A model generated the notes under the pieces. That model was not told the DNA's origin, searched no databases, and saw nothing but the letters and a program-made list of their open reading frames with translations. Both the position numbers and the translations under genes were made by a program. From Macrostomum lignano (taxonomy: Eukaryota): DNA of 47,682 nucleotides. The stretch is taken from NCBI GenBank assembly GCA_002269645.1, contig NIVC01002030.1:1-47682 (forward strand), read 5' to 3'. Below, in pieces: positions 19,946 through 47,682 of the stretch (position 1 is its first letter; the number at the start of each line of letters is the position of its first letter).

Positions 19946-20256
19946 AATCTTATACTTACTTTCCCACAAGCTCTGTCTGCTTTCCTCTCTTCCCTTGCCT
20001 CTGAACACTTGAAGAGTCATGCATCATCGATGAAATTTCAAATCCTGAATTTCCAACAGCTGCAGCTTCTATAATTCTCTTTCCAAATCAAAATACTCTC
20101 CTACCGAGTAGGTGGCGCAGCAGCCATCAAGCAAACTGCGCGTTGAAATTGTAGCAAAATGCGCGCATGGGAAACCCTTACCGCACAGCATTACCGTATC
20201 TGCACCTGTTTGCGGGAATACTCATAAAGAATTGAAGCGCAATTATACTTTATTTT

Positions 20257-21531
20257 ATCTACTGCACGATGGATCTGTATATCTACTGCACCATCTGTAC
20301 ATCTACTGCACCATCTGTATATTCTACTGCACCATCTGTATATCTACTGCACCTTCTGTATATCTACTGCACCATCTGTATGTCTACTGCACCATCTGTA
20401 CATCTACTGCACCATCTGTATACCTACTGCACCTTCTGTATGTCTACTGCACCATCTGTACATCTACTGCACCATCTGTATACCTACTGCACCTTCTGTA
20501 TATCTACTGCACCATCTGTATGTCTACTGCACCATCTGTACATCTACTGCACCATCTGTATACCTACTGCACCTTCTGTATATCTACTGCACCATCTGTA
20601 TGTCTACTGCACCATCTGTACATCTACTGCACCATCTGTATACCTACTGCACCATCTGTATGTCTACTGCACCATCTGTATATTCTACTGCACCATCTGT
20701 ATATCTACTGCACCATCTGTATATCTACTGCACCTTCTGTATATCTACTGCACCATCTGTATGTCTACTGCACCATCTATATAAATATCTACTGCACCAT
20801 CTGTATACCTACTGCACCATCTGTATATCTACTGCACCATCTGTAAATCTACTGCACCGTCTGTATATTCTACTGCACCATCTGTATATCTACTGCACCT
20901 TCTGTATATCTACTGCACCATCTGTAAATCTACTGCACCATCTGTATATCTACTGCACCATCTGTATATCTACTGCACCTTCTGTAAATCTACTGCACCG
21001 TCTGTATATTCTACTGCACCATCTGTATATCTACTGCACCATCTGTAAATCTACTGCACCATCTGTATATCTACTGCACCATCTGTATATCTACTGCACC
21101 TTCTGTATATCTACTGCACCATCTGTATATCTACTGCACCATCTGTATATCTACTGCACCATCTGTATATCTACTGCACCATCTGTAAATCTACTGCACC
21201 GTCTGTATATTCTACTGCACCATCTGTATATCTACTGCACCTTCTGTATATCTACTGCACCATCTGTATGTCTACTGCACCATCTATATAAATATCTACT
21301 GCACCATCTGTATATCTACTGCACCTTCTGTAAATCTACTGCACCGTCTGTATATTCTACTGCACCATCTGTATATTCTACTGCACCATCTGTACATCTA
21401 CTGCACCATCTGTATATTCTACTGCACCATCTGTACATCTACTGCACCATCTGTATATCTACTGCACCATCTGTATATCTACTGCACCATCTGTATATCT
21501 ACTGCACCATCTGTATATCTACTGCACCATC
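20257..21531. repeat. 20-bp minisatellite
   Basis: Unit atatctactgcaccatctgt, ~63 copies. Confidence 0.96.
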
Positions 21532-22044
21532 GAAATCTCATTGTTAATACATCAAATTCTTACTGTTAATTCCTCGAAGTCTTTCAATGTAGAGAATCAT
21601 TGTGTCCAATCAAAGTTACATGGATATTACACACGCCGCGCTTCCGTAATTGTTAATACAGTCTGCATTGCAACTGACTTTTTCTAGCTCAAAAAGTTGC
21701 TATTAGAATTTGATTTTGCATAAATTTTGTTTACAAACTTTTGACGTCCTTATTTTGAGTTTCTAAACTATACAAAATTTACAATGCTTATGGCAAATCA
21801 AAGCAAATTTTGAAGTTGCTACAGTAAGGGGAATTTCGGAAATGAGATTCTTATGCATGATAGGGAGTTTCTCTGTTTCTACTGTAATTTTATGTTTCTG
21901 AAATTTCAAAGGTATGATTTTATTCAAGTGCAGAAATCAATAATTTTCGGACAAATTTCTGTTACATATTGTCGGCACATGGTGCAAGGATTTCTAGGGA
22001 ATCAAAATGTCATGGATTATCTTTATCTTCGATTTTTGTATGCA

Positions 22045-22940
22045 GCCTCTGCTTGATGCATGGCACCCTACCTTAGCGCCTCTGCTTGATGCATGGCGCC
22101 CTCCCTTAGCGCCTCTGCTTGATGCATGGCGCCCTCCCTTAGCGCCTCTGCTTGATGCATGGCGCCCTCCCTTAGCGCCTCTGCTTGATGCATGGCGCCC
22201 TCCCTTAGCGCCTCTGCTTGATGCATGGCGCCCTCCCTTAGCGCCTCTGCTTGATGCATGGCGCCCTCCCTTAGCGCCTCTGCTTGATGCATGGCGCCCT
22301 ACCTTAGCGCCTCTGCTTGATGCATGGCGCCCTCCCTTAGCGCCTCTGCTTGATGCATGGCGCCCTCCCTTAGCGCCTCTGCTTGATGCATGGCGCCCTC
22401 CCTTAGCGCCTCTGCTTGATGCATGGCGCCCTCCCTTAGCGCCTCTGCTTGATGCATGGCGCCCTCCCTTAGCGCCTCTGCTTGATGCATGGCGCCCTCC
22501 CTTAGCGCCTCTGCTTGATGCATGGCGCCCTCCCTTAGTGCTTCTGCTTGATGCATGGCGCCCTCCCAAAGCGCCTCTGCTTGATGCATGGTGCCCTCCC
22601 TTAGCGCCTCTGCTTGATGCATGGCGCCCTCCCTTAGCGCCTCTGCTTGATGCATGGCGCCCTCCCTTAGCGCCTCTGCTTGATGCATGGCGCCCTCCCT
22701 TAGCGCCTCTGCTTGATGCATGGCGCCCTCCCTTAGCGCTTCTGCTTGATGCATGGCGCCCTCCCTTAGTGCTTCTGCTTGATGCATGGCGCCCTCCCAA
22801 AGCGCCTCTGCTTGATGCATGGCGCCCTCCCTTAGCGCTTCCGCTTGATGCATGGCGCCCTCCCTTAGCGCCTCTGCTTGATGCATGGCGCCCTCCCTTA
22901 GCGCCTCTGCTTGATGCATGGCGCCCTCCCTTAGCGCCTC
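22045..22940. repeat. 33-bp minisatellite
   Basis: Unit agcgcctctgcttgatgcatggcgccctccctt, ~27 copies. Confidence 0.96.
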
Positions 22941-23420
22941 TGTTTGATACATGGCGCCCTACAGAATCCAGATTAGCTCTGCTTGATACATGGTGCCCTA
23001 CAGAATCCAGATTAGCTCTGCTTGATGCATGGCGCCTTACAGAATCCAGATTAGCTTTGCTTGATACATGGCGCCCTACAGAATCCAGATTAGCTTTGCT
23101 TGATACATGGCGCCCTACAGAATCCAGATTAGCTCTGCTTGATACATGGCGCCCTACAGAATCCAGATTAGCTTTGCTTGATACATGGCGCCCTACAGAA
23201 TCCAGATTAGCTCACTTGATGCATGGCGCCCCACAGAATCCAGATTAGCTCTACTTGATACATGGCGCCCTACAGAATCCAGATTAGCTCTGCTTGATGC
23301 AAGGCGCCCTACAGAATCCAGATTAGCTCTGCTTGATGCAAGGCGCCCCACAGAATCCAGATTAGCTCACTTGATGCATGGCGCCCCACAGAATCTAGAT
23401 TAGCTCTATACTTGATGCAT
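22941..23420. repeat. 39-bp minisatellite related to the adjacent 33-bp unit
   Basis: Unit acagaatccagattagctctgcttgatacatggcgccct, ~12 copies; shares gcttgat(g/a)catggcgccc with the 33-mer. Confidence 0.93.
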
Positions 23421-23875
23421 GGTATTAGCCGACAAAAAATAATATAAGTCATCAACGTTACCACAATGTATTTGCAGGGGGCTATGCATGCTATATGAGC
23501 CATGCACTCTGCGCTATACAAGCCAGTTGTATTTTATCGGAAATAAAATCGCTCCTAAATGCTACGAGCTATATGCTAAAGCCGAATAGCTGACTGAATT
23601 TTTCGTAATACATGCGAATCTTGTGTCTGACAACTGGGCCATATTTTCGATATTCTATTCCTATAATTCTTTGCTAGCTGTATAGGTCGTGGTTATTGCA
23701 AGGGCTTTTAACGGAACTCAAGCCCTGCTTTTTTATATATTCTGTATGCGCACAGTTACCCATATGGCCCATTCTCTGTGCGAGTTACAGTTCAAATGCA
23801 TTATTTGCTTGAGGCTCAACGTTCAAGATGAAGCATTCTATATTGCACGTTGTATGGATAAAGACTATAGCGCCG

Positions 23876-24690
23876 TCTTATAGATGTAACTGATTTCCTA
23901 TAGATAAATCAGATATCTTATAGATGAACAATATGTCTTATCGATGAATCTGATGTCTTATAGATGAATCAGATATCTTTCAGATGATTCAGATGTCTCT
24001 TAGATTAATCACATCTCTTCTAATTCAGACTCTAATATAAATGTCTTATAGATGAATAATATTTCTTATAGATGAATCAGATGTCTCTTAGATGAATCAG
24101 ATGTCTTATAGATGAATCGGATGTCTAATAGACAAATCGGATGTATAATAGATAAATCAGATATCTTATCGATGAATCAGATATCTTATCGATGAATCAG
24201 ATATCTTATCGATGAATCAGATATCTTATCGATGAATCAGATATCTTATCGATGAATCAGATATCTTATCGATGAATCAGATATCTTATCGATGAATCAG
24301 ATATCTTATCGATGAATCAGATATCTTATCGATGAACAATATGTCTTATAGATGAAGCAGATGTCTTATAGATGAATCAGATGTCTTATAGATGAATCGA
24401 ATGTCTAATAGATGAATTCGATGTCTAATAGATAAATCGGATGTCTAATAGATGAATCAGATGTCTTATAGATGAATCAGGTGTCTTTTGAATGAATCGA
24501 ATGTTTTATAGATGGATACTGTCTTATAGATTAATCAAATGTCTTTCAGATGAATCAGATTTCTTATAGACGAATCAGATGTCTTATACTTCAAGTTAAT
24601 AGATTAATCAAATTTCTTGTAAATGAATCCAGATGAATCTGCTTTTTTCTAGATGAGTCCGATGTCTTATAGATGGCTCCGCTGTCTTAT
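23876..24690. repeat. 20-bp minisatellite, degenerate flanks with a homogeneous core
   Basis: Unit tagatgaatcagatgtctta; perfect tcgatgaatcagatatctta run at ~24165-24335. Confidence 0.9.
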
Positions 24691-24858
24691 ATACTCTTAG
24701 GAGAATAATAAATAAGTAAAAAGTCAGTAAGCCAGTCTAAGACTTCGCGTCTTTGCAATAAATATTAGTTAGTTTTACATTTTCGTTATTTTTGCGATTG
24801 TATATCACAGTAAACATTCTGGTGGCTAAAGTATAAGCACTGTGGCGCTGAAATAAGC

Positions 24859-26422
24859 AACAACAACAACAAAACAACAAAATACGCAGCCCCGCATGCA
24901 CAGTCACAGTTAGAGCAGGGCGCGTCAGATGGCGCGCCGCAGAGCCTGGGAGCGAATAAAGTCCGCTCCGTTGGCAGTGTCGGGCGCCCCAGCGTCGCAC
25001 AGCAGGCAGTCCACGTATCGACGGGTTCGGGCCTGACCCCGCCTGAACGGACCCTGCAAGGTGAGCAGCAGGACGTCCTGAACAGGTTGGGGTAGTAGCC
25101 CTCGGCCCGGATCACGTGACCCGCCAGTTGAAGTCGCCGCCGGCGCAGGATGGTGGACGGGCGCTGCAGCTTGGCCCGATCGTACAGGGCCTCGGTCCCG
25201 ACGCTCTCGTCAGCTCGAAAGGCCGCACGGAGCAGCTCTGAGTGCGCCGAGTCCAGCTGCCGCTCTAGCGTAGCCGTCAGCGTCCACGTCTCGGCGTTGT
25301 ACAGCAGGACGGTCTTGACCACCGCCTGCCACAGCCGAGCCCTCTGGCGGTCGGGCAGCGCTTCGGACTGGAGGACGGCTCGGATCGAACGAAAGGCCAC
25401 CCAGGCAAGTCCTCTGCGCCTCCGGAGGTCCTCTTCCACGTGGGGCACCAGACCGCCGAGGTAGGTGAACCGCTGGCAGCGTGCGAGCCTGCAGCCTGGT
25501 CGTCTGCCCGTCTGCGCCGCGGCACGTCAGGTCCGCTGGGATGTCGGCCGGCACAGTCAGCACCTCGGTCTTCAGCGTGTTGACGATCAGACCGACGCTC
25601 GATGCCACTTCGACCAGCCTGTCGATCTGGCCCTGGGCGCCTTCAACAGACGAGGACAGGAGGGCGAGGTCGTCGGCGTAGCCAAGCACGCTTAGGCGCT
25701 TTTCGCCGTGGCGGCGACCGATGCGTCTGCGCAGCAGGAAGCCGTCATTAGCCGTGGGGAGTGCGGTCCGAAGCACCCAGTCCAGCAGCAGCACGAAGAG
25801 GAACGGCGCTAGCGTGTCGCCCTGCAGAACTCCTGATGAAGTATCGAACAGGTCAGACAGGCCGTCCGCCGTCACCACAGCAGCTCGAGTATCGCAATAC
25901 AGCGCCATGACAGCGTCGATTAGCTGCTGGGGTACCCGGTAGGCTCGAAAGACAAAGGGAAGCGCGGCTCTCAGCACCGAGTCAAACGCCTTTCGAAAGT
26001 CAACGAAGACAATGATCAGCGTAGACTGGCGGATGCGCGCCTCCTCGATGACACGGCGGAGTGCAAGGATCTGTGTCACTGTGCCGCATTGCGGCCGGAA
26101 TCCGTTCTGCTCGTACTGCAGGTACGGGTCCAGCACCGACTGCAGACGATCGAGCAGCAGCCGGTTGAAGAGCTTCGCGAGATCATCAGCGAGATCCCGC
26201 GGTGGTCTTCCTTCCGCGTTGTCCCTGCCTTCTTCGGGATGTGCGCGACGGTCCACTCGGTAGGCGCAGGAGCGCCGGCGAGCACGCGGTTCATGACGCC
26301 TGTGACCTGGGAGGCTACACAACGGAGCCGCAGCGCTTCGACCGGGACTTCGTCGGGGCCGAGCGCCTTGCCGCCTGCCTGATCTTTTCCGAGCGAACAG
26401 CACAACTGTTATTTTACAACAG
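24859..26422 (-). mobile_element. 5'-truncated RTE-clade LINE with (TTG)n-like tail and 10-bp TSD
   Basis: RT motifs: KALGPDEVP, PKKAG..HRGISL, QNGFRP, FVDFRKAFDSV, GVLQGDTLAPFLF, LGYADDLALL, GLIVNTLKT, FTYLG, then the RTE-like tail VLLYNAETW...RRRRLQLAGHVIR. Stop at ~24925-24927; several frameshifts. TGAAATAAGC is duplicated at 24849-24858 and 26423-26432. Confidence 0.9.
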
Positions 26423-27260
26423 TGAAATAAGCACTGTGGCGCTAAAGTAAGCACTGTGGCGCTGAAATAAGCACTGTGGCGCTAAAGTAAGCATTGTGGC
26501 GCTGAAATTAGCACTGTGGCGCTAAAGTAAGCATTGTGGCGCTGAAATAAGCACTGTGACGCTGAAGTAAGCACTGTGGCGCTGAAATAAGCACTGTGGC
26601 GCTGAAATAAGCACTGTGGCGCTGAAATAAGCACTGTGGCGCTGAAATAAGCACTGTGGCGCTGAAATAAGCACTGTGGCGCTAAATCAAGCATTGTTGC
26701 GCTGAAATAAGCACTGTGGCGCTAAATCAAGCATTGTGGCGCCTAAATGACGCCATGGTAAGCATTTTGCACCAAATTAAGCATCGTGGCGCCATAATAA
26801 GCAGTGTGAGTATGGGGCTATAGCAAGCATTGTGGCGCCAAAGTAAGCATTGTGGCACCAAAGTAAGCATTGTGGCGCCATAATAAGCAGTGTGAGTGTG
26901 GGGCTATAGCAAGCATTGTGGCGCCAAAGTAAGCATTGTGGCGCCAAAGTAAGCATTGTGGCGCCAAAGTAAGCATTGTGGCGCCAAAGTAAGCATTGTG
27001 GCGCCATAATAAGCAGTGTGAGTGTGGGGCTATAGCAAGCATTATGGCGCCAAAGTAAGCATTGTGGCGCCAAAGTAAGCATTGTGGCGCCAAAGTAGCA
27101 TTGTGGCGCCAAAGTAGCATTGTGGCGCCAAAGTAAGCATTGTGGTGCCATAATAAGCAGTGTAAGTGTGGGGCTATAGCAAGCATTGTGGCGCCAAAGT
27201 AAGCATTGTGGCGCCAAAGTATGCATTGTGGCGCTATAATAAGCAGTGTGAGTGTGAGGC
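26423..27260. repeat. 20-bp minisatellite with GTGGCGC core and interspersed longer variant
   Basis: Units taagcactgtggcgctgaaa / taagcattgtggcgccaaag plus a recurring cataataagcagtgtgagtgtggggctatagc insert. One more unit lies left of the RTE at 24834-24858. Confidence 0.93.
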
Positions 27261-27987
27261 TATAGTACGCATTGCGGACAGGAGCGTTGCCAAGGGGTGG
27301 ACACCGGGGACATGTCCCCCTTTGGAGAGGGGACAAATTTTTTGCTGCTTTTGTATTTTGCTTTTCGTTTCTGCATGTCATATAATAAGGAGATGGATTG
27401 GTGTCTCTGCTCTCTCCCTGACGGGAATCCTGGCTAAGCGCCTGATTGTGGCGTAAAAATGGCGCTTTAGTAAGCATTTTGGCGCCGAAGTAATCAGTGT
27501 GGTAAATTAAAATCCACTGGGAAGTAAATATATTGTATTTATATAATGAAGTAAATATTCGATCCTATTGGCTACAGTCTCCCAATGCTATTGCAGCGAC
27601 ACTATAAGAGCTGAGGGAGGCCTCCCACTCCCACCCCCCCCCACCGACCTCCCCACGCCCACCTCCACTCCTCTGCTTCTTCAGTGTCATTCCCGCCGCA
27701 CAAGCAGCAGCAACCCCATGGCCCCTTGCCCCCCAAGCCGTTGTTTCATTTTATATCCCCAACCCCCTGTCGCCTCTGCGTTCCTTCCGCTTCCCTCGTC
27801 CCGCTCCCCGCCCGGTCCCGCCACCCCGCGCGCCCAATGGGGAAGAGGCTGCTGCATCCGACTGCGCCGCCTTCTACAGGGGATCAGAGCATGTTATTTA
27901 GCCTGCTTTGTGATTGTTGATCGACACCTGTTTACCTATCCTAACCTTTTTGCTGATAATTCTCCAAAGATCACTGATTACTGCGTG

Positions 27988-29180
27988 ACTCTAAATAGCA
28001 CTGTGAATTGTGAATCAGTCACTGAGACTCTAAATAGCACTGTGAATTGTGAATCAGTCCCTGAGACTCTAAATAGCACTGTGAATTGTGAATCAGTCAC
28101 TTCAACTCTAAATAGCACTGTGAATTGTGAATCAGTCCTGCGACTCTAAATAGCACTGTGAATTGTGAATCAGTCACTTCAACTCTAAATAGCCCTGTGA
28201 ATTGTGAATCAGTCACTTCAACTCTAAATAGCACTGTGAATTGTGAATCAGTCACTTCAACTCTAAATAGCACTGTGAATTGTGAATCAGTCTCTGAGAC
28301 TCTAAATAGCACTGTGAATTGTGAATCAGTCTCTGAGACTCTAAATAGCACTGTGAATTGTGAATCAGTCTTTGAGACTCTAAATAGCACTGTGAATTGT
28401 GAATGAGTCACTTCAACTCTAAATAGCACTGTGAATTGTGAATGAGTCACTTCAACTCTAAATAGCCCTGTGAATTGTGAATCAGTCACTTCAACTCTAA
28501 ATAGCACTGTGAATTGTGAATCAGTCACTTCAACTCTAAATAGCACTGTGAATTGTGAATCAGTCACTTCAACTCTAAATAGCACTGTGAACTGTGAATC
28601 AGTCCCTGAGACTCTAAATAGCACTGTGAATTGTGAATCAGTCTCTGAGACTCTAAATAGCACTGTGAATTGTGAATCAGTCACTGAGACTCTAAATAGC
28701 ACTGTGAATTGTGAATCAGTCCCTTCAACTCTAAATAGCACTGTGAATTGTGAATCAGTCACTTCAACTCTAAATAGCACTGTGAATTGTGAATCAGTCA
28801 CTTCAACTCTAAATAGCACTGTGAATTGTGAATCAGTCACTTCAACTCTAAATAGCACTGTGAATTGTGAATCAGTCTCTGAGACTCTAAATAGCACTGT
28901 GAATTGTGAATCAGTCCCTGAGACTCTAAATAGCACTGTGAATTGTGAATCAGTCACTTCAACTCTAAATAGCACTGTGAATTGTGAATCAGTCACTTCA
29001 ACTCTAAATAGCACTGTGAATTGTGAATCAGTCACTTCAACTCTAAATAGCACTGTGAATTGTGAATCAGTCACTTCAACTCTAAATAGCACTGTGAATT
29101 GTGAATCAGTCACTTCAACTCTAAATAGCACTTGAATTGTGAATCAGTCCCTGAGACTCTAAATAGCACTGTGAATTGTG
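27988..29180. repeat. 39-bp minisatellite, ~30 copies
   Basis: Unit actctaaatagcactgtgaattgtgaatcagtc(acttca/tctgag/cctgag). Confidence 0.97.
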
Positions 29181-38909: not shown

Positions 38910-39845
38910 TACGAGGGTGCTTCAAATCTATAGTTTTGCCGTTCAGCCATTTCAAAAGCTTTTTTTCATAATTTTTTTCGGCTTTTATAAAGCACTTTTA
39001 TATAGAATTTATAGGGTGCAGTGTTTTCTTTTCATGTCTTTTTAACTGTATCTTTTCTGCACGAACTTTAAGCACCCCCTGAATTTTCCGCAAAATGCAC
39101 ACACAAGCAGAAATACCAAGCCCTCATATTAAATTTTGCAATTGAGGAGAAGATAAAGTCTGTACCCCACAACTTGTCCCTCTCTGCGCACCATCGAGCG
39201 ACTTTACAACGAATTCAAGCGTGGCAGGGTGAGCCATAAAAGTTGAGGCAGTAGCGCCCCGAATGCTTTCTCGTCGGGACTACTGCCTGACCTCTACAAT
39301 GAGAACCTGGATGGATTTGAGCGGTGAATCATTACTGGGGATGAGTGCTGGATCTGCCACTATGGAACCCCGAGTCTAAGCGAGATTCCAGGGCTGTTTC
39401 TTCTGGGACTGTCAGGGGATCCTGCTCGCCGAGTACCTGTCTGTTAGGCACACTGTCACAGGTGTCTGGTCCTCCGAACAGCTGGGCCGGTTTCGTCAGG
39501 CAGTGGTCCAGAAGAAGCGGGGGAAGCTGAGTGCTGGCCCCCTTGCTGCTTCACGACAATGCCTCAGCTCACACTGCCCAGGTTGCGGTGAATGCTGCCA
39601 CCACTGCGGGGTTCGAAATCCTCCCACATCCGGCCTATTCACCAGACCTGGCACCCTCCGATTTTCATCTATTCCGTCAGCTCAAGCGGCCACTCCATGG
39701 GCACCGCTTCGAGTCCAAAGAAGAGGTCATCACCCTCGCCAACCAGTGGCTAGAGGACCAAGAGGACCAGCGACACCCCGGGCGCTGCGCGACCGATGGC
39801 AGAAGTGCATTCATTGATCGCCAGGGGGACTATGTAGAAAAATAA
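38910..39845 (+). mobile_element. Decayed mariner (DD34D) transposon; left TIR only
   Basis: Starts TA-CGAGGGTGCTTCAAA, a mariner-type TIR start. Transposase remnants 39095-39845: ITGDECW, LHDNASAH and YSPDLAPSDFHLF with 34 residues between the 2nd and 3rd Asp, ending GDYVEK*. Stops, frameshifts and deletions; no right TIR seen. Confidence 0.88.
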
Positions 39846-40193
39846 GCTCTAACTATATGAACGACAATTCTGTGTAGAATTCGGTTAGTTTAAATCAGTC
39901 TAGGTAAGTGGTGTACGCGCAGTCTTATGCGCAGCAACTTCAGAAAAGACTTACTATGAAGTTTTAAAAAAATTACCGAAAATTTTACTGCTATCCTTCC
40001 CACTCTCTACAGCATAGAAAAAAACAGTTTGCGTAGGCCTAGACAAAAACTAGCTTTCATGCGCAAATAGTTCCACTTATGTCAGTAGAGAGATTGGCAT
40101 GCCAGGAACGAATGCTTTATGAAAACGAATGTTTAATTAAAGCGGTTACAGAATTTTCTAGATAATAAAAGCTACCCAGAGATGATTTACTTC

Positions 40194-40254
40194 AACTCTG
40201 GTTTCTCTTCATTCCACGATTAAATCTTTCGCCTTTTACTAAAGATTTCCGTGG
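40194..40254 (+). ncRNA. U5: U5 spliceosomal snRNA gene, 5' half (interrupted)
   Basis: AACTCTGGTTTCTCTTCATTCCACGATTAAATCTTTCGCCTTTTACTAAAGATTTCCGTGG matches the metazoan U5 5' domain. Invariant loop 1 GCCTTTTAC lies at 40231-40239, closed by AAATCTTT/AAAGATTT. Confidence 0.93.
40241..40254 (+). repeat. 14-bp target-site duplication AAAGATTTCCGTGG (copies 40241-40254, 40844-40857, 47297-47310)
   Basis: The identical U5-derived 14-mer is present at all three array junctions. Confidence 0.85.
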
Positions 40255-40843
40255 TGATTTCCGAAGTGACCACGCTCTGAAACGCAACTAATAAAACTAA
40301 ACTTGCTGCCTGAGACAGAGATCGGTTGATCAGTCATTAGGACTGATTAGGTAATCTCTATGTCTCCTCGCGTTTCTTTTTACAATTTTCCCAACTGTGT
40401 TTTTTACCCAACTGCTCTACAAATATCACTAATTGCTTTTTTACACCTTTACTATATTCATTCTATTTTTACAACTAAATTCAAATATGCGCTATTGCAT
40501 TTTTAATCTCTATTTTTTTTTACTTAAATGTCTTGCTTTTACTCTCAATAGGCCTTCAAATATCTAGCACGTATTTTTTAGATGTCCTGTTTTTATTAGA
40601 TCCCTTCTTTGTGTGGGATTTCCCTCCCCTCTTTTTTATCCCCAAATGCGTGCAAAATACTGCAAAATATTGAAAAATAGTTTTATATATTTATATTTTT
40701 AATTTCAATATTCGTATTAAATATTCAAATCGAAATCTTGTAAATATTTTTAATTCTTTCGATAAAATACAAAATATAACTGCGGCAGAGTTCTTCGGAA
40801 CTGACCCGCGCCGGTTTCGACGGCACCTCGTTTTAACAACAAA
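40255..40843 (+). mobile_element. 5'-truncated copy (3' UTR only) of the U5-associated LINE
   Basis: 40263-40843 is near-identical to 46724-47296. It ends ttttaacaacaaaaaa, has an 8-nt junction insert tgatttcc and is flanked by the 14-mer. Confidence 0.85.
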
Positions 40844-40912
40844 AAAGATTTCCGTGGAGGGATACCCTTAGGAGAATTCTCTAGTTTTTGCAGGCCTTTC
40901 CTAGAAAGGCTT
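40844..40912 (+). ncRNA. U5: U5 snRNA 3' half at the head of the full-length LINE copy
   Basis: GATTTCCGTGGAGGGATAC completes stem Ib against host GTTTCTCTTCA. Sm-like AGTTTTTG at 40883-40890; terminal stem-loop AGGCCTTTC-CTA-GAAAGGCTT at 40892-40912. Confidence 0.8.
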
Positions 40913-41135
40913 ATTAGAAATAGAATAGTTTAGACTAGCCTAGCTTAGCTCTTAAAAGTACTTTAGTTAGCCTTCCATTCCACTGTACATTTGTTTTTAT
41001 CTCTACTCTACCCCACCCCTAGTCTTATCTTGCAGTCGCCCCACCCCTCTCAGCGAGCGCACTTTGTGTGCCTCCTGACTCATTAGTTAGTTGTAGTTTA
41101 GGTTTAGTTTGAGTGTACCCAAATAATCACGCCAT

Positions 41136-43839
41136 ATGGCTGCAAATCGCGCCAGCGCTAAAAAGATGGACTGCCGGCCCTCTCTCGAGCACCGGTATCG
41201 TCCGAACGAAGCCTACGGTCGCCAGCTTCTTGGACTGACGCCGACAGCTGAGCCATCGACTGCGAGCCCGCCGCCAGCAGGCCTGATGCGAGCTCGACGC
41301 AGTCTGGAAGGCCGCCACTCGATCAGCCCACCGGCCGGCGAGCTCTTGCGCAACGCAGAGGAGATCCTGCGAGAGAATGAGCAGCTGCCGGAGGCTGCAG
41401 GCGCAGAGGCAGAGCAGCGCATGTCTCTCGACTGCGACGAGCCAGGCCAGACAAGCGCCCTGCCATCCAACGAGGCCGCAGCAACCACCGAGCCACCAAC
41501 TGCCGAGTCCAGCGAGCTCAGTGCGGCAGCGGCAGCGCCGACGTCTGAGGAGCGCCAGCAATCGGCTGCAGACCAGGCCTCGACGCTGCCAAAGCCCCCT
41601 GCCGAGCAACTGGACGCTGACATCAGTCAAATCATCTTCCCTGATGAGCCTGACTTGACTGACTGTCAGCAGACGATCTACGCTAGCGACAGCACCATCA
41701 TCTATGCGCCCAAGTTCCTGAGCGAGGTCGCGGACCAAGTCTACGAGCGCCTGATCACCGACCTGCTGCCTCAAGCCTTTCAGCATCGTCCGAGTGAGCA
41801 GCGCCGCGTCTACTGGATCGGCCCGTCGTACACCTACAGCGGGGTTGAGCTGAAGGAAAATCTAAACTGGCATCAGGTAATTGAAGACATTCGTGACTTC
41901 ATTTACCATGATACCCAGTTCGATGTCCCGAAGTTCAACTCCGTGTTGGTGAACTTCTACACCGAGCCGGGAGACCGGATTCCCTGGCACTCGGACGATG
42001 AGGATGAGCTCGGCGACAGGCCGACGATCGCGACCGTGTCCTTCGGTGCTGAGCGGCTGTTCATGCTGCGCCGTCGGGACGGCAACGTGACGCACCGCTT
42101 TCCAACGCTGCCAGGCTCGCTGATTCTGATGGCAGGAAACTGCCAGAAACGCCTGCAGCACCAGGTGCCCGCCGCCCACTCTCAGAATGGCGTCCGCATC
42201 TCGCTAACATTCCGTGTCACCAAGCCGGAGCTGCGGCGCAAGCGAGCTCTGCCGGATGACCCGACCTACAGCCAGCCGCTAAACGGCGGCCCATTCGGCG
42301 ACGACCAAGGCGGTCGGGACGACGACCAAGGCGGCCACGACGACGACCAGGGCGGCCGGGGCGACGACAGGCCCCAGGAGCGGCAGGCGACGGCGACGCG
42401 AGACCGCGAAGGCGATCGGGGTCGGCGCGGCCGTGGCGGCCACCAGCGAGGCAGGCGAGGAGGTCGCGGCGCGGCGTCCGGTGCGGCGGCGGCTTCGGCG
42501 GCTTCCTGGCCGGCCGGTGCGGCGGCGGCTTCGGCGACAAGCGCGCAGGCGGCTGCGGCAGCGCGGCCCTACGCGCAGGTTGCGGCGCGCCCTGCGCCGC
42601 CCAGAAGGCCCCAGGCTGCCATCCCGCCGATCGTTTTGAGGTGCACCGGGACGCGGCCAACAAGCTGATGCAGTTCGTTGCCTGGCTGCAGACCAACTTT
42701 GCCGGCGAAGCTAGAGCCGTCAACACTGCGCCGATGGCGAATCAGCCGGCCTATCTCGTGTTCCCAGCGTCGGAGCGGGACTACAACGTCTTCCTGGGCG
42801 GCGCGCTGCGCGAGGAGAAGCTGCTCGAGCATCCCGTAAAGCGCCGTCCAGCCCGAGCCCGACCGCTGGACAACAGAACAGGGCCCGACAGAGTGCAGCA
42901 GCAGCCGGTACGCACCTTTGTCGCTACTGAGGTGCCCCTCGCGTTCTCGGAGGCTGACTTCGCGACCCTGTTGCGCGACACGCTCAAGCTGGACATTGTC
43001 AGCGTCCACAGAATCCGAGCCAGAGCGACTGGGAAGGCAACCCAGTTCGTGCGCATCTTCACAAAGTCGGCGATGACCTACGAGAAGTGCCTCCGCGATG
43101 GCATCTGCACCGACTTCTTGAAGTTCAACTGCGAGGACAGCCGCACAGACGAGCCGGTCCGCGCTCTGCAATGCCAGCGCTGCCAGGAGTTCGGCCACCG
43201 CGCTGCCAGTGTCGGGGGCAGCAGCGCTGCCGGATTTGCGGCGGCCAGCATTCCTGGAAGGAGTGCCAGCACGAGGGCCCAGCGGTCTGCGCCAACTGCG
43301 GCGGCTCGCACCGAACCACCAGTCGAGCCTGCACCGTCGCCAAGGCGGAGCACGACAAGGCGACCAGAGCGGCTGCTGAGGCCAAAGCCGCGGCGCGAGC
43401 TGCGGAAGCTGCGGCCGCTGCTGCCCCAGTGTCAAGTGAGACCGACGACGCCGCCGCCGACGACGACTCCGACAGCGGCTGGCTGATCCGCCGAGGCAGG
43501 CGCACGGTGCCGGTACCCGCCGCGATCCGGCCGCTTGTCATCGTGACCGATGATGCCAGGAGCGCTCCGGCGGCAGAGACCGAGTCTGATGTCAATGCGA
43601 CTGCTCCGTCAGCTGATGCCGGCCAGGCGGTGCAGCTGCAGCTTAGTGACTTTATGTCGGTGGTGAGCATGCTGTTGCCCCTGATCACCCGCTCTCTGAC
43701 TCAAGTGGTTGTGCAGGCCCTGTCCCGACCGCCTGGGGAGGTCCTCACTGTGGAATCAACCAGTAAAATGGTTGAGGACATTGTGCGGGCTGCACTCCAG
43801 GAAGTGCCGGGCATGGCTGGCATGACCACTGAGTCCTAG
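41136..43839 (+). CDS. LINE ORF1: AlkB 2OG-Fe(II) dioxygenase + RGG-rich linker + gag-like region with three Cys/His zinc knuckles (2 frameshifts)
   Basis: ORFs 41136-42668, 42641-43486 and 43087-43839 join if one base is added at ~42648-42650 (G-run) and at ~43206 (C). Motifs: WHSDDE, PYAQVAA..IPPIVL, CQRCQEFGHRAAQC, CRICGGQHSWKEC, CANCGGSHRTTSRAC. Confidence 0.85.
41697..42215 (+). CDS. AlkB-family (ALKBH2/3-like) 2OG-Fe(II) dioxygenase domain within ORF1
   Basis: FNSVLVNFY..GD.I.WHSDDE..LG..PTIATVSFGAER.F...GSLILM.G..Q...QHQVP...RISLTFR. HxD at 41988-41996, distal His at 42159, R-x5-R at 42195-42215. Confidence 0.93.
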
Positions 43840-43925
43840 TCTCAGGCAGCTAAACTCAAGACTTGAATTGAAACTTCAGTGCGTTAACTGTAGACTCAAA
43901 CAATCAAACCACAGCCCTGAAGATT

Positions 43926-46658
43926 ATGCATTTAAACTGCAGGGGATTCAACCCGAAAATCAGAGAGCTGACACAGTGGGTCGTCAGTCAGGAGCTAGAC
44001 ATTGCCCTCTTCTCTGAGACCATTCTCAAAAGTTGTCACACTGTCCAGATTCCCGGGTACTCCATCATTCGGTATGATACCCCGCAAGTCAAACGCGGGC
44101 TTCTCCTTGCCCACTCTCCTCGCGTCAAACTCACAAATGTGCGCTTGCAGTATGACAATGTCAACCATGAAGCCATCTCTTGCACCGTGAGCTTGTCTGA
44201 CAACTCTGGTCCTGACTTCAATCTTGCTCTGGTGTACAGGTCTCCAGCACCGTATCATCTGAACCTGAACCTACTCAAAAATCTTCTCTCCGTAGGCGCA
44301 GTGTGCTCATGGGTGACCTCAATGCCAGACACCGCTTCCTCGGGGTGACAGCAGCAACAACATGGCTGGCTACCAGCTGCACGACTGGCTGTCTGAGGGC
44401 CCCACCTCGCCCACCATTCTCAATCAAGCCGGTCAGTTCACCAGACTGGCCACCAAAAACGGGCTGATTTCTAGGAATGTCTTGGACCTCGCCCTGGCCA
44501 CTGAGGACTTTCTCCCATTTGTGCAGGACTTTGAGGTGGGTCCTGACCTGGGCAGTGACCACTTACCTATAATCCTCACGCTCAATATTCAGTCGAAGAA
44601 ATGGGCTGGTCCCCCCAGACCCAAAAACTTCTCAAAAACAAACTGGGACGAGTTCAGACTCAAAATCAGTGAAGCTTTGAGCTCAGATCAGAATATTAAA
44701 TTATCAAATGCTGACCAAATCAATGCCGAAGTGGATCACATCACAAAGGCCATTCACACCGTGATTGACTCCACAGTACCAGACTGTGGTGCCAAAAACG
44801 CCCTACCCAAGTACATCCTCGACCTGATCAAAGAGCGCAGACGACTCAGACGCCTCTTCTTCAGCACACGGGATCAAAATTTCAAAACCCAAGCAAACCA
44901 GCTCGCAAATCGCATAAAGAGAGAAATTAACTCCTTCCAGAATGGAAAGCTCACCAAAGTCTGTGAGAGTATTGTTGAAAACAGCAAGAACAAGAAAGTG
45001 AAGAATTTCTGGCATGACACTAAAAAGCTGATGGGCAAATTTAAGCCAACCTCATCCCCAGCCTCACCCTGGGTCAAACAACTGCGCACACAGATCTGGA
45101 GAAGGCTAACCTTCTAGCCGAGACTCTGGACTCAAAGATGCGCCCAGTCCCTTCCACATGCGAACAGCTCAAACGTGAGGTGGCCGATGTGGCACAGCTC
45201 ACCTCATTCTACCCCGTTCCTGAGGGAATCGAACCCATTGAGACCCACCCACTTGATGCTGCATTCTCTGTGGCAGACACAGTGTGGGAACTGGAGCACC
45301 TCAGGCCTGATGGAGCACCCGGGCTGGACAAGATTCCCAACTGCGTCCTCAAGCTGGGCTTAGAGGGGTGGCAATCACGAGACTCACTAACCTCTTCAAC
45401 GCCTGCTACGGTCGAGGGATTTTCCCCAGCGCCTGGAAGAAAGCTGTGGTGACAATGATCCCCAAGCCGGACAAACCGCCCGAACACCCCAACTCCTACA
45501 GACCAATCAGCCTGACCTCATGTCTGGGCAAAGTGTTTGAGAAGCTTATAGCAAAAAGACTCACCAAGCACCTTGAGGATAATAAGACCCTAGGAGATGA
45601 CCAATGCGCCTACCGCAAAATTCACTCCACGTATGACAACCTGTGCCGTCTGGCACAAGATGTCATGGTAGCAAAGTGCAAAGCTAAAAAGTCCGCTGCA
45701 GTCTTCCTGGATGCAGAGGCAGCTTTTGACTCCACCTGGCACGACAAGATCAGGCATAGCATGCTCACCGATGGTTTTCCACCTATGCTCATGCGAATCC
45801 TGTCTGACTACCTGCGAGACAGACAGATCCAGGTTCGAATCGAGGGGGCCCTAAGCGATCCCCACACCATCCAGGCTGGCGTCCCTCAGGGAGGCATTCT
45901 GAGCCCTCTCCTGTACCTCCTCTTCGTCAGCTCAATGCCGACTCCCACCATCTCAAGCGTCAAACGCAGTCAATTCGCAGACGACATGGCCGTCTGGGCC
46001 TCAGCAGACACCTTTGCGGGGCTCCGAACATCCCTTCAAAGCTACCTCAGACGAGTCTTTGACTGGTGCGGTAAACAAGGCATTAGACTGAATGCCGGTA
46101 AAAGCAAAGCAATCGCTTTCAACTACAAACCCACTAGGCGCATGGACTTGCGACCCAAACTGTATCTGGGGACACTGAGGTTCCGTACTGTCAGGAGGTG
46201 AAATTCCTGGGTGTCCTCCTTGACCAGAGCCTCTGCCTGAACAAACATGTGGACAACATGGCAGATACCAGCAGAGCCATTGTAATGTCACTGTGCAGAA
46301 TTGCAAAAATGACTAAGCTGAGTAGCACCACCCTCAGAATGCTGTACAGGGCATACGGAGAAAGCGCTCTCACCTACGGAGCGCCAATCCTGAGCCAAAT
46401 TGTGCGACTAACCAAATCAAATTGCAGAAAATTCAAAACCTGGCTCTCCGTATCTGCTATGGTGTGCCATCCTACATCAGCATTGAATACCTGCACAAGC
46501 TGGCAGGTATGCCGATGCTCGCAGACAGGGTCAAGCAGCTGGGGGTGGCTTGGCTGCTCAAGATGAGGGCAGCCAAGCTCCACAGCTTCCACATTGAGCC
46601 GGAAGCCCCTCGGGCTCCGGGCCGAACCCCGTCCTCAATGTCCTCTGGGATGCCATGA
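43926..46658 (+). CDS. LINE ORF2: AP-like endonuclease + reverse transcriptase (about 6 frameshifts); no RNase H recognised
   Basis: APE: HLNCRG, LFSET, GDLNARH, LDLAL, GSDHLP. RT: APGLDKIP, WKKAVVTMIPKPDK..YRPISLTSCLGKVFEKLI, FLDAEAAFDSTWH, GVPQGGILSPLLY, QFADD, LNAGKS, KFLGVLLD. Jockey-like tail QKIQNLALR..G.P.YI..LH..AG. Confidence 0.92.
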
Positions 46659-47296
46659 GGCGTCGGGAAAGAAACAGGGGAATCCCACCCCAGGGTTAGG
46701 CTGGCTACCAGCCTTCCAAACCGGAAGTGACCACGCTCTGAAACGCAACTAATAAAACTAAACTTGCTGCCTGAGACAGAGATCGGTTGATCAGTCATTA
46801 GGACTGATTAGGTAATCTCTATGTCTCCTCGCGTTTCTTTTTACAATTTTCCCAACTGTGTTTTTTACCCAACTGCTCTACAAATATCACTAATTGCTTT
46901 TTTACACCTTTACTATATTCATTCTATTTTTACAACTAAATTCAAATATGCGCTATTGCATTTTTAATCTCTATTTTTTACTTAAATGTCTTGCTTTTAC
47001 TCTCAATAGGCCTTCAAATATCTAGCACGTATTTTTTAGATGTCCTGTTTTTATTAGATCCCTTCTTTGTGTGCGGATTTCCCTCCCTCTTTTTTATCCC
47101 CAAATGCGTGCAAAATACTGCAAAATATTGAAAAATAGTTTTATATATGTATTTTTAATTTCAATATTCGTATTAAATATTCAAATCGAAATCTTGTAAA
47201 TATTTTTAATTCTTTCGATCAAATACAAAATATAACTGCGGCAGAGTTCTTCGGAACTGACCCGCGCCGGTTTCGACGGCACCTCGTTTTAACAAC

Positions 47297-47364
47297 AAAG
47301 ATTTCCGTGGAGGATACTCTTAGGAGAATTCTCTAGTTTTTGCAGGCCTTTCCTAGAAAGGCTT
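47297..47364 (+). ncRNA. U5: Second U5 snRNA 3' half at the head of the next LINE copy
   Basis: Near-identical to 40844-40912. Sm-like AGTTTTTG at 47335-47342, with the same terminal hairpin. Confidence 0.8.
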
Positions 47365-47682
47365 ATTGGAATAGAATAGTTTAGACTAGCCTAGCTTAGC
47401 TCTTAAAGTACTTTAGTTAGCCTTCCATTCCACTGTACATTTGTTTTTTATCTCTACTCTACCCCACCCCTAGTCTTATCTTGCAGTCGCCCCACCCCTC
47501 TCAGCGAGCGCACTTTGTGTGCCTCCTGACTCATTAGTTAGTTGTTAGTTTAGTTTAGTGTGAGTGCACCCAAATAATCACGCCATATGGCTGCAAATCG
47601 CGCCAGCGCTAAAAAGATGGACTGCCGGCCCTCTCTCGAGCACCGGTATCGTCCGAACGAAGCCTACGGTCGCCAGCTTCTT
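47311..47682 (+). mobile_element. Start of a further head-to-tail copy of the same LINE (runs off the window; ORF1 ATG at 47587)
   Basis: Near-identical to 40858-41231 with scattered substitutions and indels; translates MAANRASAKKMDCRPSLEHRYRPNEAYGRQL. Confidence 0.9.

What the first reader, a model, noticed from the sequence alone, without database searches (positions are those of the whole stretch)
40241..47310. Head-to-tail array explained by serial insertion into one regenerating target; the newest, truncated insertion split the U5 gene
Seen order: U5 5' half, 14-mer, 3'UTR-only copy, 14-mer, full copy, 14-mer, next copy. Copies differ by substitutions as well as indels (gataaaatac vs gatcaaatac; gagtgtacc vs gagtgcacc), so they are not one duplicated read. 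The TSD starts with AAA, so the bottom-strand primer would end in TTT and could pair with the A-rich tail. The truncated copy has an 8-nt junction insert (tgatttcc) copied from the target. Inference: the 5'-truncated copy lacks the U5 3' half, so it separated the U5 halves by ~590 bp and probably inactivated this U5 locus.
Basis: partly seen in the sequence, partly recalled or inferred. Interest (0 to 1): 0.75.

Follow-up and report, generated by a model that had tools for sequence, protein, structure and literature searches.

The report
LINE array inside a U5 gene
A flatworm jumping gene (a LINE) inserts at one exact spot in the gene for U5 spliceosomal RNA and carries its own copy of that gene's 3' half, so full-length insertions rebuild the gene and stack head to tail; in this window a shortened insertion has split the gene.

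Summary
The window is the first 47.7 kb of a Macrostomum lignano scaffold. It reads: U5 nt 1-62, 8-nt filler, a 581-nt 3'UTR-only LINE copy, a 6,453-nt full copy, then a third copy cut by an assembly gap. Each copy is bounded by AAAGATTTCCGTGG (U5 nt 49-62).

Every full copy begins with U5 nt 63-116 plus 27 nt of 3' flank. The array end cannot be read here because of a 2,317-N gap.

One ends in a different U5 3' half, so the element carries its own. Their heads are full-length U5 genes (about 84 bits). The window head is only a fragment (44 bits).

In both complete arrays the tail copy has the most private substitutions, which fits growth at the head. The same model is published for R1 arrays in 28S genes, also with a 14-bp duplication.

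Not shown: that the truncated copy is the newest, or that every unit is an independent insertion. Two neighbouring units share a frameshift.

New here are the gene-restoring leader and an AlkB-like domain in ORF1.

The parts
40114..40138 (+). Conserved upstream block GCTTTATGAAAACGAATGTTTAATT, -79 to -55 from U5 +1. Candidate proximal sequence element of the U5 snRNA promoter.
   Evidence: Nearly identical in all three array-bearing loci although the surrounding sequence diverges. Its function is inferred from position only.
40193..40254 (+). Host U5 snRNA gene, nt 1-62 (5' stem and loop I). Its last 14 nt (40241-40254) are the upstream copy of the target-site duplication.
   Evidence: Rfam RF00020 match, model 14-63, 43.8 bits. 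In register with the full-length U5 matches in L003 and L005.
40255..40262 (+). 8-nt filler TGATTTCC at the 5' junction of the truncated copy. GATTTCC repeats part of the target 14-mer.
   Evidence: It aligns neither to the element nor to the continuation of U5. Chance of a 7-nt match is about 0.015.
40263..40843 (+). Copy A: a 5'-truncated insertion holding 3'UTR only. It equals 46724-47296 of copy B and ends in ...AACAAC plus three extra A.
   Evidence: Pairwise alignment shows 2 substitutions and 5 indel events. Flanked by the 14-mer on both sides.
40844..40857 (+). Second copy of the 14-mer (U5 nt 49-62). It is the downstream target-site duplication of copy A and the boundary of copy B.
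40858..40938 (+). Leader of copy B: U5 nt 63-116 (Sm site AGTTTTTG and 3' stem-loop; 40858-40911) plus 27 nt of U5 3' flank with a candidate 3' box (40912-40938).
   Evidence: The same leader joined to a U5 5' half gives full-length Rfam U5 matches of 83.5-83.8 bits in L003 and L005. The 95 nt (14-mer plus leader) recur at the end of the scaffold 2892 array, followed by non-LINE flank.
41136..43839 (+). ORF1 of copy B. It holds an AlkB-like 2OG-Fe(II) oxygenase domain, an RG-rich linker and three CCHC knuckles. Two frameshifts interrupt it in this copy.
   Evidence: Pfam PF13532, E 1e-21. The majority consensus of 7 copies gives an uninterrupted 901-aa ORF.
43926..46699 (+). ORF2 of copy B: AP-type endonuclease plus reverse transcriptase, with no RNase H and no C-terminal Cys-His motif. 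Six small frameshifting indels relative to the consensus interrupt it in this copy.
   Evidence: Pfam Exo_endo_phos_2 and RVT_1. Copy M_1 (L003 12792-15572) has an intact 926-aa ORF2.
46700..47296 (+). 3'UTR of copy B, AT-rich, ending ...CACCTCGTTTTAACAAC.
   Evidence: Alignment to copy A and to six other copies. Two terminal hairpins are predicted, but they are not significant (z -1.6).
47297..47310 (+). Third copy of the 14-mer.
47311..47682 (+). Copy C: leader (U5 nt 63-116 with a 1-nt deletion, 47311-47363; 3' flank 47364-47389), 5'UTR and the start of ORF1. Cut off by the scaffold gap.
   Evidence: Alignment to copy B shows 4 substitutions and 6 one-base indels. The gap is at record 47683-49999.

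Best explanation
This is a low-copy, target-specific non-LTR retrotransposon (a LINE with AP endonuclease and reverse transcriptase) of Macrostomum lignano. It integrates at one site in U5 snRNA genes.

Shown:
- The bottom strand is nicked before U5 nt 49 and the top strand after nt 62, giving the 14-bp duplication AAAGATTTCCGTGG.
- Every full-length copy starts with U5 nt 63-116 plus 27 nt of U5 3' flank. A full-length insertion therefore rebuilds a complete U5 gene at its 5' junction and pushes the resident 3' half downstream.
- Because an intact target is rebuilt at the head, further insertions stack head to tail, each separated by the 14-mer. The oldest copy lies next to the displaced 3' half.
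- In this window a copy truncated to its 3'UTR, lacking the leader, sits at the head. The U5 gene is split into nt 1-62 and nt 49-116, 589 nt apart.

Inferred:
- The element has no promoter of its own. It is transcribed by read-through from the U5 promoter past the 3' box.
- The U5 sequence on the cDNA end anneals to the target. This would explain why all 8 full-length 5' junctions are seamless while the truncated one has a filler.
- The leader was originally acquired by 5' transduction from a U5 gene of the type found on scaffold 2892.
- Some array units probably arose by local duplication or unequal exchange in addition to insertion.
For: 1. Anatomy in the window.

2. Origin: the window is record positions 1-47682 of NIVC01002030.1, assembly GCA_002269645.1, M. 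lignano.

3. Scaffold 2892 (merged L003, L004, L006): U5 5' half, four copies and a final 14-mer, then U5 3' half plus 27 nt, then unrelated DNA.

4. Scaffold 3829 (L005): U5 5' half, two copies and a final 14-mer, then a different U5 3' half. That half pairs perfectly with the 5' half (11/11 and 4/4 base pairs) and has the Sm site GAUUUGUGA.

5. Rfam finds full-length U5 at both array heads, 83.8 and 83.5 bits, E about 1e-13. The window head gives only model positions 14-63 at 43.8 bits.

6. Marks of retrotransposition:
- clean 14-bp duplication around the 5'-truncated copy;
- filler at its 5' junction;
- 3' ends varying between TTTTTAAC, AACAAC, AACAACAAC and AACAAC+AAA;
- intact 901-aa consensus ORF1 and an intact 926-aa ORF2 in copy M_1;
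- Pfam AP-endonuclease and RVT_1 hits.

7. Polarity in private substitutions: tail copies M_4 35 and L_2 17, against M_1 2, M_2 0, M_3 0 and L_1 5.

8. Copies differ by 0.06-1.2% in substitutions. Flanks of the paralogous loci differ by 1.6% and 3.4%.

9. The promoter-like block upstream of U5 is conserved at all three heads.

10. Published precedents:
- R1 tandem arrays separated by the 14-bp 28S duplication are explained by insertion into the duplication at the 5' end of a resident R1 (PMC2718515).
- Uniform 5' junctions arise where the R2 RNA carries target sequence (PMC3774820).
Against: - The right end of the window array lies in an assembly gap, so the model is verified only at sister loci.
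- All three arrays lie in paralogous or allelic loci. Repeated targeting of unrelated U5 genes is therefore not shown, and part of the array structure may be inherited.
- M_2 and M_3 are 99.94% identical and share an ORF1 frameshift outside a long homopolymer. This fits local duplication better than two retrotranspositions.
- Variant sites are mosaic among copies, so recombination or gene conversion blurs any dating.
- There are no expression data. Read-through transcription and homology-guided 5' joining are inferences.
- Rfam finds no ribozyme in the leader or anywhere in 40000-47682.
- The structure alone cannot tell whether new copies enter only the rebuilt head gene or also the internal junctions.
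- Three loci of the nearest database relatives (about 40% RT identity) have no U5 nearby.
Confidence: 0.75

Rival explanations
1. One or a few insertions, with the array then grown mainly by unequal crossing-over or tandem duplication of the 6.45-kb unit. The 14-mer plus leader at every junction would supply the homology.
For: M_1, M_2 and M_3 differ by only 0.06-0.25%. M_2 and M_3 share an ORF1 frameshift and a 5'UTR 1-nt deletion. Most internal junctions are identical. Copy number differs among paralogous loci: 2, 4 and at least 2.1.
Against: It cannot produce copy A, which is 5'-truncated, has a breakpoint exactly at the nick site, a 14-bp duplication and a filler. It does not explain the differing 3' tails. 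It does not predict the age polarity with the oldest copy at the tail, nor variants shared between arrays such as W_B with L_2 and M_4 with L_1. It probably contributes to array growth but is not the sole cause.
Confidence: 0.15
2. Multimers made in a single integration event. The reverse transcriptase reaches the U5 sequence at the 5' end of one RNA and switches, by homology, to the read-through U5 tail of a second RNA. This would lay down several units at once.
For: It would give exactly the observed junction (3' end, then U5 nt 49 onward). It would also explain near-identical neighbours such as M_1 to M_3. End-to-end template jumping is documented for the R2 enzyme (cited in PMC4494074).
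Against: Units within one array differ in age: M_4 versus M_1-3, and L_2 versus L_1. They also differ in tail length. Copy A has its own duplication. There is no direct evidence for this route.
Confidence: 0.05
3. Alternative parsing. The element inserts 27 nt downstream of an intact U5 gene and carries U5 nt 49-116 plus 27 nt as a 3'-transduced trailer. The U5 gene itself is never the target.
For: The scaffold 2892 array can be read this way: intact U5 plus 27 nt, then units each ending in U5 49-116 plus 27 nt, then host flank.
Against: Copy A is flanked by a 14-bp duplication inside U5, and its 5' junction lies at nt 62/63. The scaffold 3829 array ends in a different U5 3' half rather than the supposed trailer. 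The window head U5 is truly interrupted. Homology on the upstream side of the insertion point is also not how target-primed reverse transcription uses homology; this last point rests on established knowledge.
Confidence: 0.03
4. Assembly artefact: a single insertion mis-assembled into a tandem array from error-prone long reads.
For: The array runs into a scaffold gap. Many differences between copies are 1-nt indels typical of PacBio consensus errors.
Against: Three separate scaffolds show the same junction architecture with different copy numbers, different internal deletions and different tails. Substitutions and diagnostic variants distinguish the copies. Unit-to-unit junctions of about 30 nt are easily spanned by single reads.
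Confidence: 0.02

Closest known systems
Tandem R1 arrays in 28S rRNA genes of Drosophila (Stage and Eickbush 2009, PMC2718515)
   Same: An AP-endonuclease LINE at one fixed site of a multicopy RNA gene. Copies lie head to tail, separated by a 14-bp target-site duplication. The published explanation is insertion of further copies into the duplication at the 5' end of a resident copy. ORF1 has three CCHC knuckles.
   Different: The target is U5 snRNA rather than 28S, and the host is a flatworm rather than an arthropod. R1 does not carry the downstream part of its target gene, so an R1 insertion leaves the 28S gene broken. No Cys-His motif is seen after the RT in ORF2 here. Clade membership was not tested by phylogeny.
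snRNA-gene-targeting transposons: Keno (Tx1 clade) and Utopia in U2 genes, a Tx1 family listed with U5 as target, Dada DNA transposons in U1 and U6
   Same: Specific integration into a small, low-copy spliceosomal RNA gene. Utopia-1_NVit is occasionally found in tandem in U2 genes (PMC4640811). U5 appears as a Tx1 target in the Fig. 3 legend of PMC4494074.
   Different: Those elements are described as interrupting the gene. In the papers read, none is described as carrying the target gene's 3' half. The nearest named database relatives of this RT are 'jockey'-type, not Tx1. This ORF2 is 926 aa and lacks the C-terminal Cys-His motif typical of L1 and Tx1. The AlkB-like ORF1 domain is not described for them.
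R2 co-transcription with 28S rRNA, and target-derived sequence on the RNA 5' end (Eickbush et al. 2013, PMC3774820)
   Same: The element relies on the target gene's promoter. Target sequence on the first-strand cDNA is proposed to anneal to the target and give uniform 5' junctions. Here 8 of 8 full-length junctions are seamless.
   Different: R2 uses a restriction-like endonuclease and an HDV-like ribozyme, and no ribozyme was detected here. The R2 tag is upstream target sequence only, whereas this leader is the downstream half of the gene plus its 3' flank. Co-transcription here is inferred, not shown.
5' transduction by upstream promoters (L1; SVA carrying MAST2 sequence, as summarised in PMC4494074)
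   Same: Flanking upstream sequence becomes a heritable part of the element because transcription starts outside it. This is the likely origin of the U5 nt 63-116 plus 27-nt leader.
   Different: Here the transduced piece is part of the element's own target gene, so it restores that gene on insertion.
Bacterial integrative elements and phages that integrate into tRNA genes and carry the displaced 3' part of the tRNA (my own knowledge, not tested here)
   Same: The mobile element supplies a replacement for the part of the RNA gene it displaces. The gene stays intact at one junction and the target is regenerated.
   Different: Those elements use a site-specific recombinase acting on double-stranded DNA in prokaryotes, not target-primed reverse transcription in an animal.

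Membership tests
Target-specific AP-endonuclease-type non-LTR retrotransposon (LINE) | ORF2 with an N-terminal AP-like endonuclease and a reverse transcriptase | tested here: met
   Pfam Exo_endo_phos_2 E 2e-11, Exo_endo_phos E 1.5e-5 and RVT_1 E 1.6e-36 on the intact 926-aa ORF2 of copy M_1. PDB sequence matches to the L1 ORF2p and R2 RT domains.
Target-specific AP-endonuclease-type non-LTR retrotransposon (LINE) | Marks of target-primed reverse transcription: a fixed 3' junction, a target-site duplication and 5'-truncated copies | tested here: met
   All 10 3' junctions in three arrays join to U5 nt 49. There is a 14-bp duplication around truncated copy A, and the short 3' tails vary.
Target-specific AP-endonuclease-type non-LTR retrotransposon (LINE) | The same site is used in independent target genes | tested here: inconclusive
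   Three arrays share the identical site, but their flanks are paralogous. The genome could not be searched as a whole.
R1 clade | 14-bp target-site duplication, and ORF1 with three CCHC knuckles | tested here: met
   14-mer duplication. Three CX2CX4HX4C-like motifs are visible in the consensus ORF1. Pfam zf-CCHC is only weak, E 0.029.
R1 clade | Cys-His motif downstream of the RT in ORF2; placement by RT phylogeny | tested here: not met
   No Cys-His motif is seen in the 160 aa after the RT of the intact ORF2. That R1 has this motif comes from memory. Phylogeny with reference elements could not be run. PDB matches to the TRAS1 endonuclease and an L1-type endonuclease tie at E 0.004.
Tx1 clade (Keno; the Tx1 family reported with U5 as target) | L1-group RT, and a long ORF2 with a C-terminal Cys-His motif | tested here: not met
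   ORF2 is 926 aa with no C-terminal Cys-His motif. The nearest named relatives are annotated 'mobile element jockey'. No Repbase references were available, so RT phylogeny was not run.
U5 spliceosomal RNA gene (Rfam RF00020) | Full-length match to the covariance model above the gathering score | tested here: not met
   The window head matches model 14-63 only, at 43.8 bits. That is above the gathering score of 40 but covers only half the model. The sister array heads match 1-117 at 83.5-83.8 bits. The U5 gene at the window head is therefore split, while the sister heads are complete.
AlkB-type 2OG-Fe(II) dioxygenase (ORF1 domain) | Pfam 2OG-FeII_Oxy_2 match with the HxD...H iron triad and the RxxxxxR motif | tested here: met
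   PF13532 E 1e-21, well above its cut-off. WHSDD, QHQV and RISLTFR are readable in the sequence. The nearest relatives are bacterial AlkB at about 40% identity, and ALKBH2. Enzyme activity was not tested.

The most novel reading that the evidence does not exclude
This LINE lives as a downstream passenger of U5 genes and repairs the gene it hits. Its RNA would be a read-through U5 transcript. The leader (U5 nt 63-116 plus the 3' box) replaces the half of the gene that insertion displaces. The host would then keep a working, promoter-driven U5 gene, whose occasional read-through expresses the element.

Successive element lineages may even have replaced the 3' half of the host's U5 RNA. Supporting this, the native-type half on scaffold 3829 is itself followed by the relic of an older junction.

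The complete U5 moiety, with its Sm site, at the RNA 5' end might also give the transposition intermediate snRNP-like stability or nuclear import. The AlkB-like ORF1 domain might remove base methylation from the RNA template.
Probability: 0.35. Interest if true: 0.8.

Novelty: new variant of a known kind. Interest (0 to 1): 0.62.

Why it matters
Target-specific LINEs are models for how selfish DNA limits harm to the host. They are also templates for site-specific gene-insertion tools. Known snRNA- and rRNA-targeting LINEs break the copy they enter and depend on the gene family being large.

An element that carries the displaced half of its target, 3'-end signal included, would do three things at once: neutralise the damage, secure a promoter, and recreate its own landing site. 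This logic is familiar from bacterial elements in tRNA genes, but it was not described for retrotransposons in the papers read here.

It also means that part of a spliceosomal RNA gene can be replaced by transposon-borne sequence. That is one possible route to U5 variants.

The truncated copy in this window is the counter-example showing the cost when the leader is lost. The AlkB-like domain adds a second, independent oddity: a candidate RNA or DNA demethylase encoded by a LINE.

Tried and rejected
- **Extending the contig at this locus.** A 2,317-N gap follows the window, then an unrelated 30-bp satellite.
- **ORF1 homologue search with the whole protein.** Low-complexity words swamped it and only two hits were returned. 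These hits, with the cluster listing, still led to the two sister scaffolds.
- **Clade assignment by PDB sequence matches.** RT hits to L1 ORF2p and R2 are similar. Endonuclease hits to an L1-type endonuclease and TRAS1 tie at E 0.004. The clade remains unresolved.
- **U5 association in relatives.** Three loci of RT relatives (about 41-43% identity) and one short contig (59%) have no Rfam hit at all.
- **Scan of metagenome contigs for the tail-plus-14-mer junction.** It gave two chance matches inside bacterial coding sequence, with no U5.
- **Exact look-up of the consensus ORF1 and the intact ORF2.** This was done to find transcriptome or other assemblies. Neither sequence is present.
- **Ribozyme or other RNA family in the element.** No convincing Rfam match in 40000-47682 apart from U5.
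- **3'UTR terminal hairpins.** Not significant, z -1.6.
- **Dating copy A against copy B by divergence.** Too few sites: 1-2 against 0-2 private substitutions.
- **Copy A as a deletion derivative of a full copy.** Rejected because its left breakpoint coincides exactly with the top-strand nick and duplication boundary.
- **The 3'-trailer parsing.** Considered and rejected; see the rival explanations.
- **Supplement of PMC4494074, to name the U5-targeting Tx1 family.** Not held in the library.

Method note: I made a majority-rule consensus of the seven LINE copies inside a script, only to check ORF integrity. I printed the ORF1 protein, not the nucleotide consensus. This is a flatworm retrotransposon, not a virus or provirus.

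Full report
**Origin of the sequence**

ORF1 of the element is on record in NCBI assembly GCA_002269645.1, scaffold NIVC01002030.1 (402 kb). Window coordinates equal record coordinates. Papers tie this accession to the Macrostomum lignano Mlig_3_7 genome.

The window stops exactly where a run of 2,317 N begins (record 47683-49999). An unrelated 30-bp satellite lies beyond it.

**The observation**

The 14-mer AAAGATTTCCGTGG occurs three times, at 40241, 40844 and 47297, all on the + strand. None are expected by chance.

Upstream of the first copy lies the 5' part of a U5 snRNA gene, matching Rfam RF00020 model positions 14-63 at 43.8 bits. By register with full-length U5 matches elsewhere, U5 +1 is 40193 and the 14-mer is U5 nt 49-62.

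After the first 14-mer the order is:
- the filler TGATTTCC (40255-40262);
- copy A (40263-40843), which aligns to 46724-47296 of copy B and so holds the 3'UTR only, starting 24 nt after the ORF2 stop;
- the second 14-mer;
- copy B, a 6,453-nt unit (40844-47296);
- the third 14-mer;
- copy C, which runs to the gap.

A versus B shows 2 substitutions and 5 indel events. B versus C shows 4 substitutions and 6 one-base indels.

About half of all small indels among copies lie in homopolymers, and some recur in unrelated copies. Many frameshifts may therefore be PacBio consensus errors.

**What the unit is**

ORF2 has an AP-type endonuclease and a reverse transcriptase. ORF1 has an AlkB-like 2OG-Fe(II) oxygenase domain (PF13532, E 1e-21), an RG-rich linker and three CCHC knuckles.

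Window copy B carries 8 small frameshifting indels. A majority consensus of seven copies nevertheless gives an uninterrupted 901-aa ORF1, and copy M_1 on another scaffold has an intact 926-aa ORF2. The family therefore looks young and possibly active.

The clade could not be assigned:
- The nearest database relatives have about 40-59% RT identity. The few that are named are called 'jockey'-type.
- PDB matches do not discriminate between clades.
- ORF2 has no Cys-His motif after the RT.

**The leader**

After each 14-mer, every full copy begins with 54 nt that complete U5: nt 63-116, with the Sm site AGUUUUUG and the 3' stem-loop. A further 27 nt follow, which resemble U5 3' flank. This is the key to the structure.

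**Two sister arrays**

The ORF1 protein cluster led to two more scaffolds of the same assembly.

*Scaffold NIVC01002892.1.* The order is: U5 5' half, 14-mer, four units (the last with a 141-nt internal deletion), a final 14-mer, the same 54-nt U5 3' half plus 27 nt, then unrelated AT-rich DNA.

*Scaffold NIVC01003829.1.* The order is: U5 5' half, 14-mer, two units (the first with internal deletions), a final 14-mer, then a different U5 3' half: AGAGGAACAUUCAAUGAGUGUUCCCUGAUUUGUGAAACCCCUUCCAAGAAGGGGUAC. This half pairs perfectly with the shared 5' half (11/11 and 4/4 base pairs). The element-borne half gives 10/11 and 3/4.

The second array also shows that the U5 half on the element travels with the element.

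Rfam scores the heads of both sister arrays as full-length U5 genes (model 1-117, 83.8 and 83.5 bits). The window head scores only as a fragment. A promoter-like block at -79 to -55 is conserved upstream of all three heads.

**Insertion or duplication?**

Evidence for retrotransposition events:
- Copy A is 5'-truncated, is flanked by a clean 14-bp duplication, and has a filler whose 7 nt repeat the target (chance about 0.015).
- The left breakpoint of copy A coincides exactly with the boundary where host and element U5 sequence meet. A random deletion would not hit that point.
- The 3' ends differ among copies: TTTTTAAC, AACAAC, AACAACAAC and AACAAC+AAA.
- Private substitutions are concentrated in the copies next to the displaced 3' half (M_4 35, L_2 17). 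Head and inner copies have few (M_1 2, M_2 0, M_3 0, L_1 5). This is the polarity expected if new copies enter the rebuilt gene at the head.
- Several diagnostic variants are shared between arrays rather than within them.

Evidence that insertion is not the whole story:
- M_2 and M_3 differ by 4 substitutions in 6.4 kb and share an ORF1 frameshift (CTCT-GCC). This suggests a local duplication, or mobilisation of a defective copy in trans.
- Variant patterns are mosaic, which suggests recombination.
- The three loci are paralogous. The window upstream flank matches scaffold 3829 with 1.6% substitutions and scaffold 2892 with 3.4%. Copies differ by 0.06-1.2%. Part of the arrays may therefore be inherited, and independent targeting of unrelated U5 genes is not shown.

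**The truncated copy**

Copy A lacks the leader, so the head U5 gene is split here. Nt 1-62 and nt 49-116 lie 589 nt apart, or 603 nt counting the duplicated 14-mer. Rfam confirms that only a half-gene remains.

Whether copy A is the newest insertion is open. By structure alone it could have entered first, with B then inserted into the retained target downstream. Divergence has no power here: 1-2 private substitutions in A against 0-2 in the same segment of B. The polarity seen in the sister arrays makes 'newest' the more likely reading.

**Mechanism: shown versus inferred**

Shown:
- the site;
- the 14-bp stagger;
- the leader;
- the rebuilt U5 gene at array heads;
- the displaced half at array tails.

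Inferred:
- Transcription is by read-through from the U5 promoter.
- The 5' junction forms by annealing of U5 sequence on the cDNA to the target. All 8 full-length 5' junctions are seamless, as in R2 lineages whose RNA keeps 28S sequence (PMC3774820).
- The leader was acquired by 5' transduction from a U5 gene of the type on scaffold 2892, whose own 3' half and first 27 flank nucleotides match the leader.

An alternative parsing treats the U5 piece as a 3' trailer of an element that inserts downstream of U5. It is rejected by copy A's duplication inside U5 and by the foreign U5 half at the end of the scaffold 3829 array.

**Comparison with what is known**

The array model is essentially the published one for R1 in Drosophila. 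There, copies are separated by the 14-bp 28S duplication, explained by insertion into the duplication at the 5' end of a resident copy (PMC2718515).

snRNA genes are known LINE targets:
- Keno and Utopia enter U2, and Utopia is occasionally found in tandem (PMC4640811).
- U5 is listed as a target of a Tx1 family in a figure legend (PMC4494074).
- Mutsu in 5S genes is described as disrupting the gene (PMC5340908).

In the papers read, no LINE is described as carrying the displaced half of its target so that the gene is restored. An AlkB domain is reported in orchid Ty3/Gypsy elements (PMC9289625). I found no report of one in a LINE ORF1, and the library is not exhaustive.

My rating is a new variant of a known kind.

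**Searches that gave nothing**

- No U5 near three loci of distant RT relatives.
- Only chance hits for the junction pattern in metagenome contigs.
- No ribozyme in the element.
- No exact match of the intact ORFs in other assemblies.

Noticed in passing
window 41700-42230 (ORF1 aa ~190-365): ORF1 of the LINE carries an AlkB-like 2OG-Fe(II) dioxygenase domain (PF13532, E 1e-21). The HxD...H and RISLTFR motifs are intact. Its nearest database relatives are stand-alone bacterial AlkB proteins (about 40% identity) and ALKBH2. No other LINE ORF1 with this domain surfaced. An AlkB domain is published for orchid Ty3/Gypsy elements.
   Followed up: partly
L005 12223-12296 (scaffold NIVC01003829.1, 37 nt past the U5 3' half that ends the array): A relic of an older junction. 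It holds 14 of the last 16 nt of the element's 3' end, followed by a decayed U5 nt 49-116 of the native type. The alignment score is 53 against a shuffle mean of 29 (0 of 1000 shuffles reach it). This suggests an earlier round of insertion. The 'native' half may itself have arrived on a deleted or miniature element.
   Followed up: partly
L003/L004: units at merged coordinates 16171-22621 and 22622-29098 of scaffold NIVC01002892.1: Neighbouring units M_2 and M_3 differ by 4 substitutions. They share a frameshifting 1-nt deletion in ORF1 and a 1-nt deletion in the 5'UTR. This points to local duplication, or to a defective copy mobilised in trans.
   Followed up: partly
window 40866-40871 and the equivalent leader positions in all copies (U5 nt 71-76): Four of the 78 substitution columns among copies fall within 6 nt of the U5 leader, in the internal-loop strand UCUUAG. 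This is a local hotspot whose meaning is unclear. It could reflect relaxed constraint, exchange with host U5 variants, or end-of-template errors.
   Followed up: no
window 41020-41040: The 5'UTR holds a pyrimidine tract plus CAG (ctagtcttatcttgcag) that looks like a 3' splice acceptor. In a species with spliced-leader trans-splicing, this could remove the U5 leader from a co-transcript. This is speculation only.
   Followed up: no
window 1739-38550: About 40 kb upstream is dominated by more than 20 different mini-satellite arrays. Periods range from 16 to 48 bp, with up to 160 copies. One example is the 20-bp array at 16775-19945. The same arrays occur in the paralogous scaffold 2892 flank.
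   Followed up: no
window 39531-39845: An ORF fragment with a DDE_3 (Tc1/mariner-type) transposase domain (E 1e-6) lies about 350 nt upstream of the U5 gene. The scaffold 3829 paralogue shares most of this region but lacks window 39753-39933, a 181-nt indel.
   Followed up: no
window 47683 onward (record 47683-49999): The window ends at a 2,317-N scaffold gap, and the sequence after it is an unrelated 30-bp satellite. The copy number of this array is therefore unknown, and the join across the gap is unverified.
   Followed up: yes
L008 10001-15334 (ENA contig ctg95054, a distant RT relative): Two RT-bearing LINE gene sets lie about 3.9 kb apart in the same orientation. This may be another tandem LINE arrangement, but no Rfam RNA gene is nearby.
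   Followed up: no
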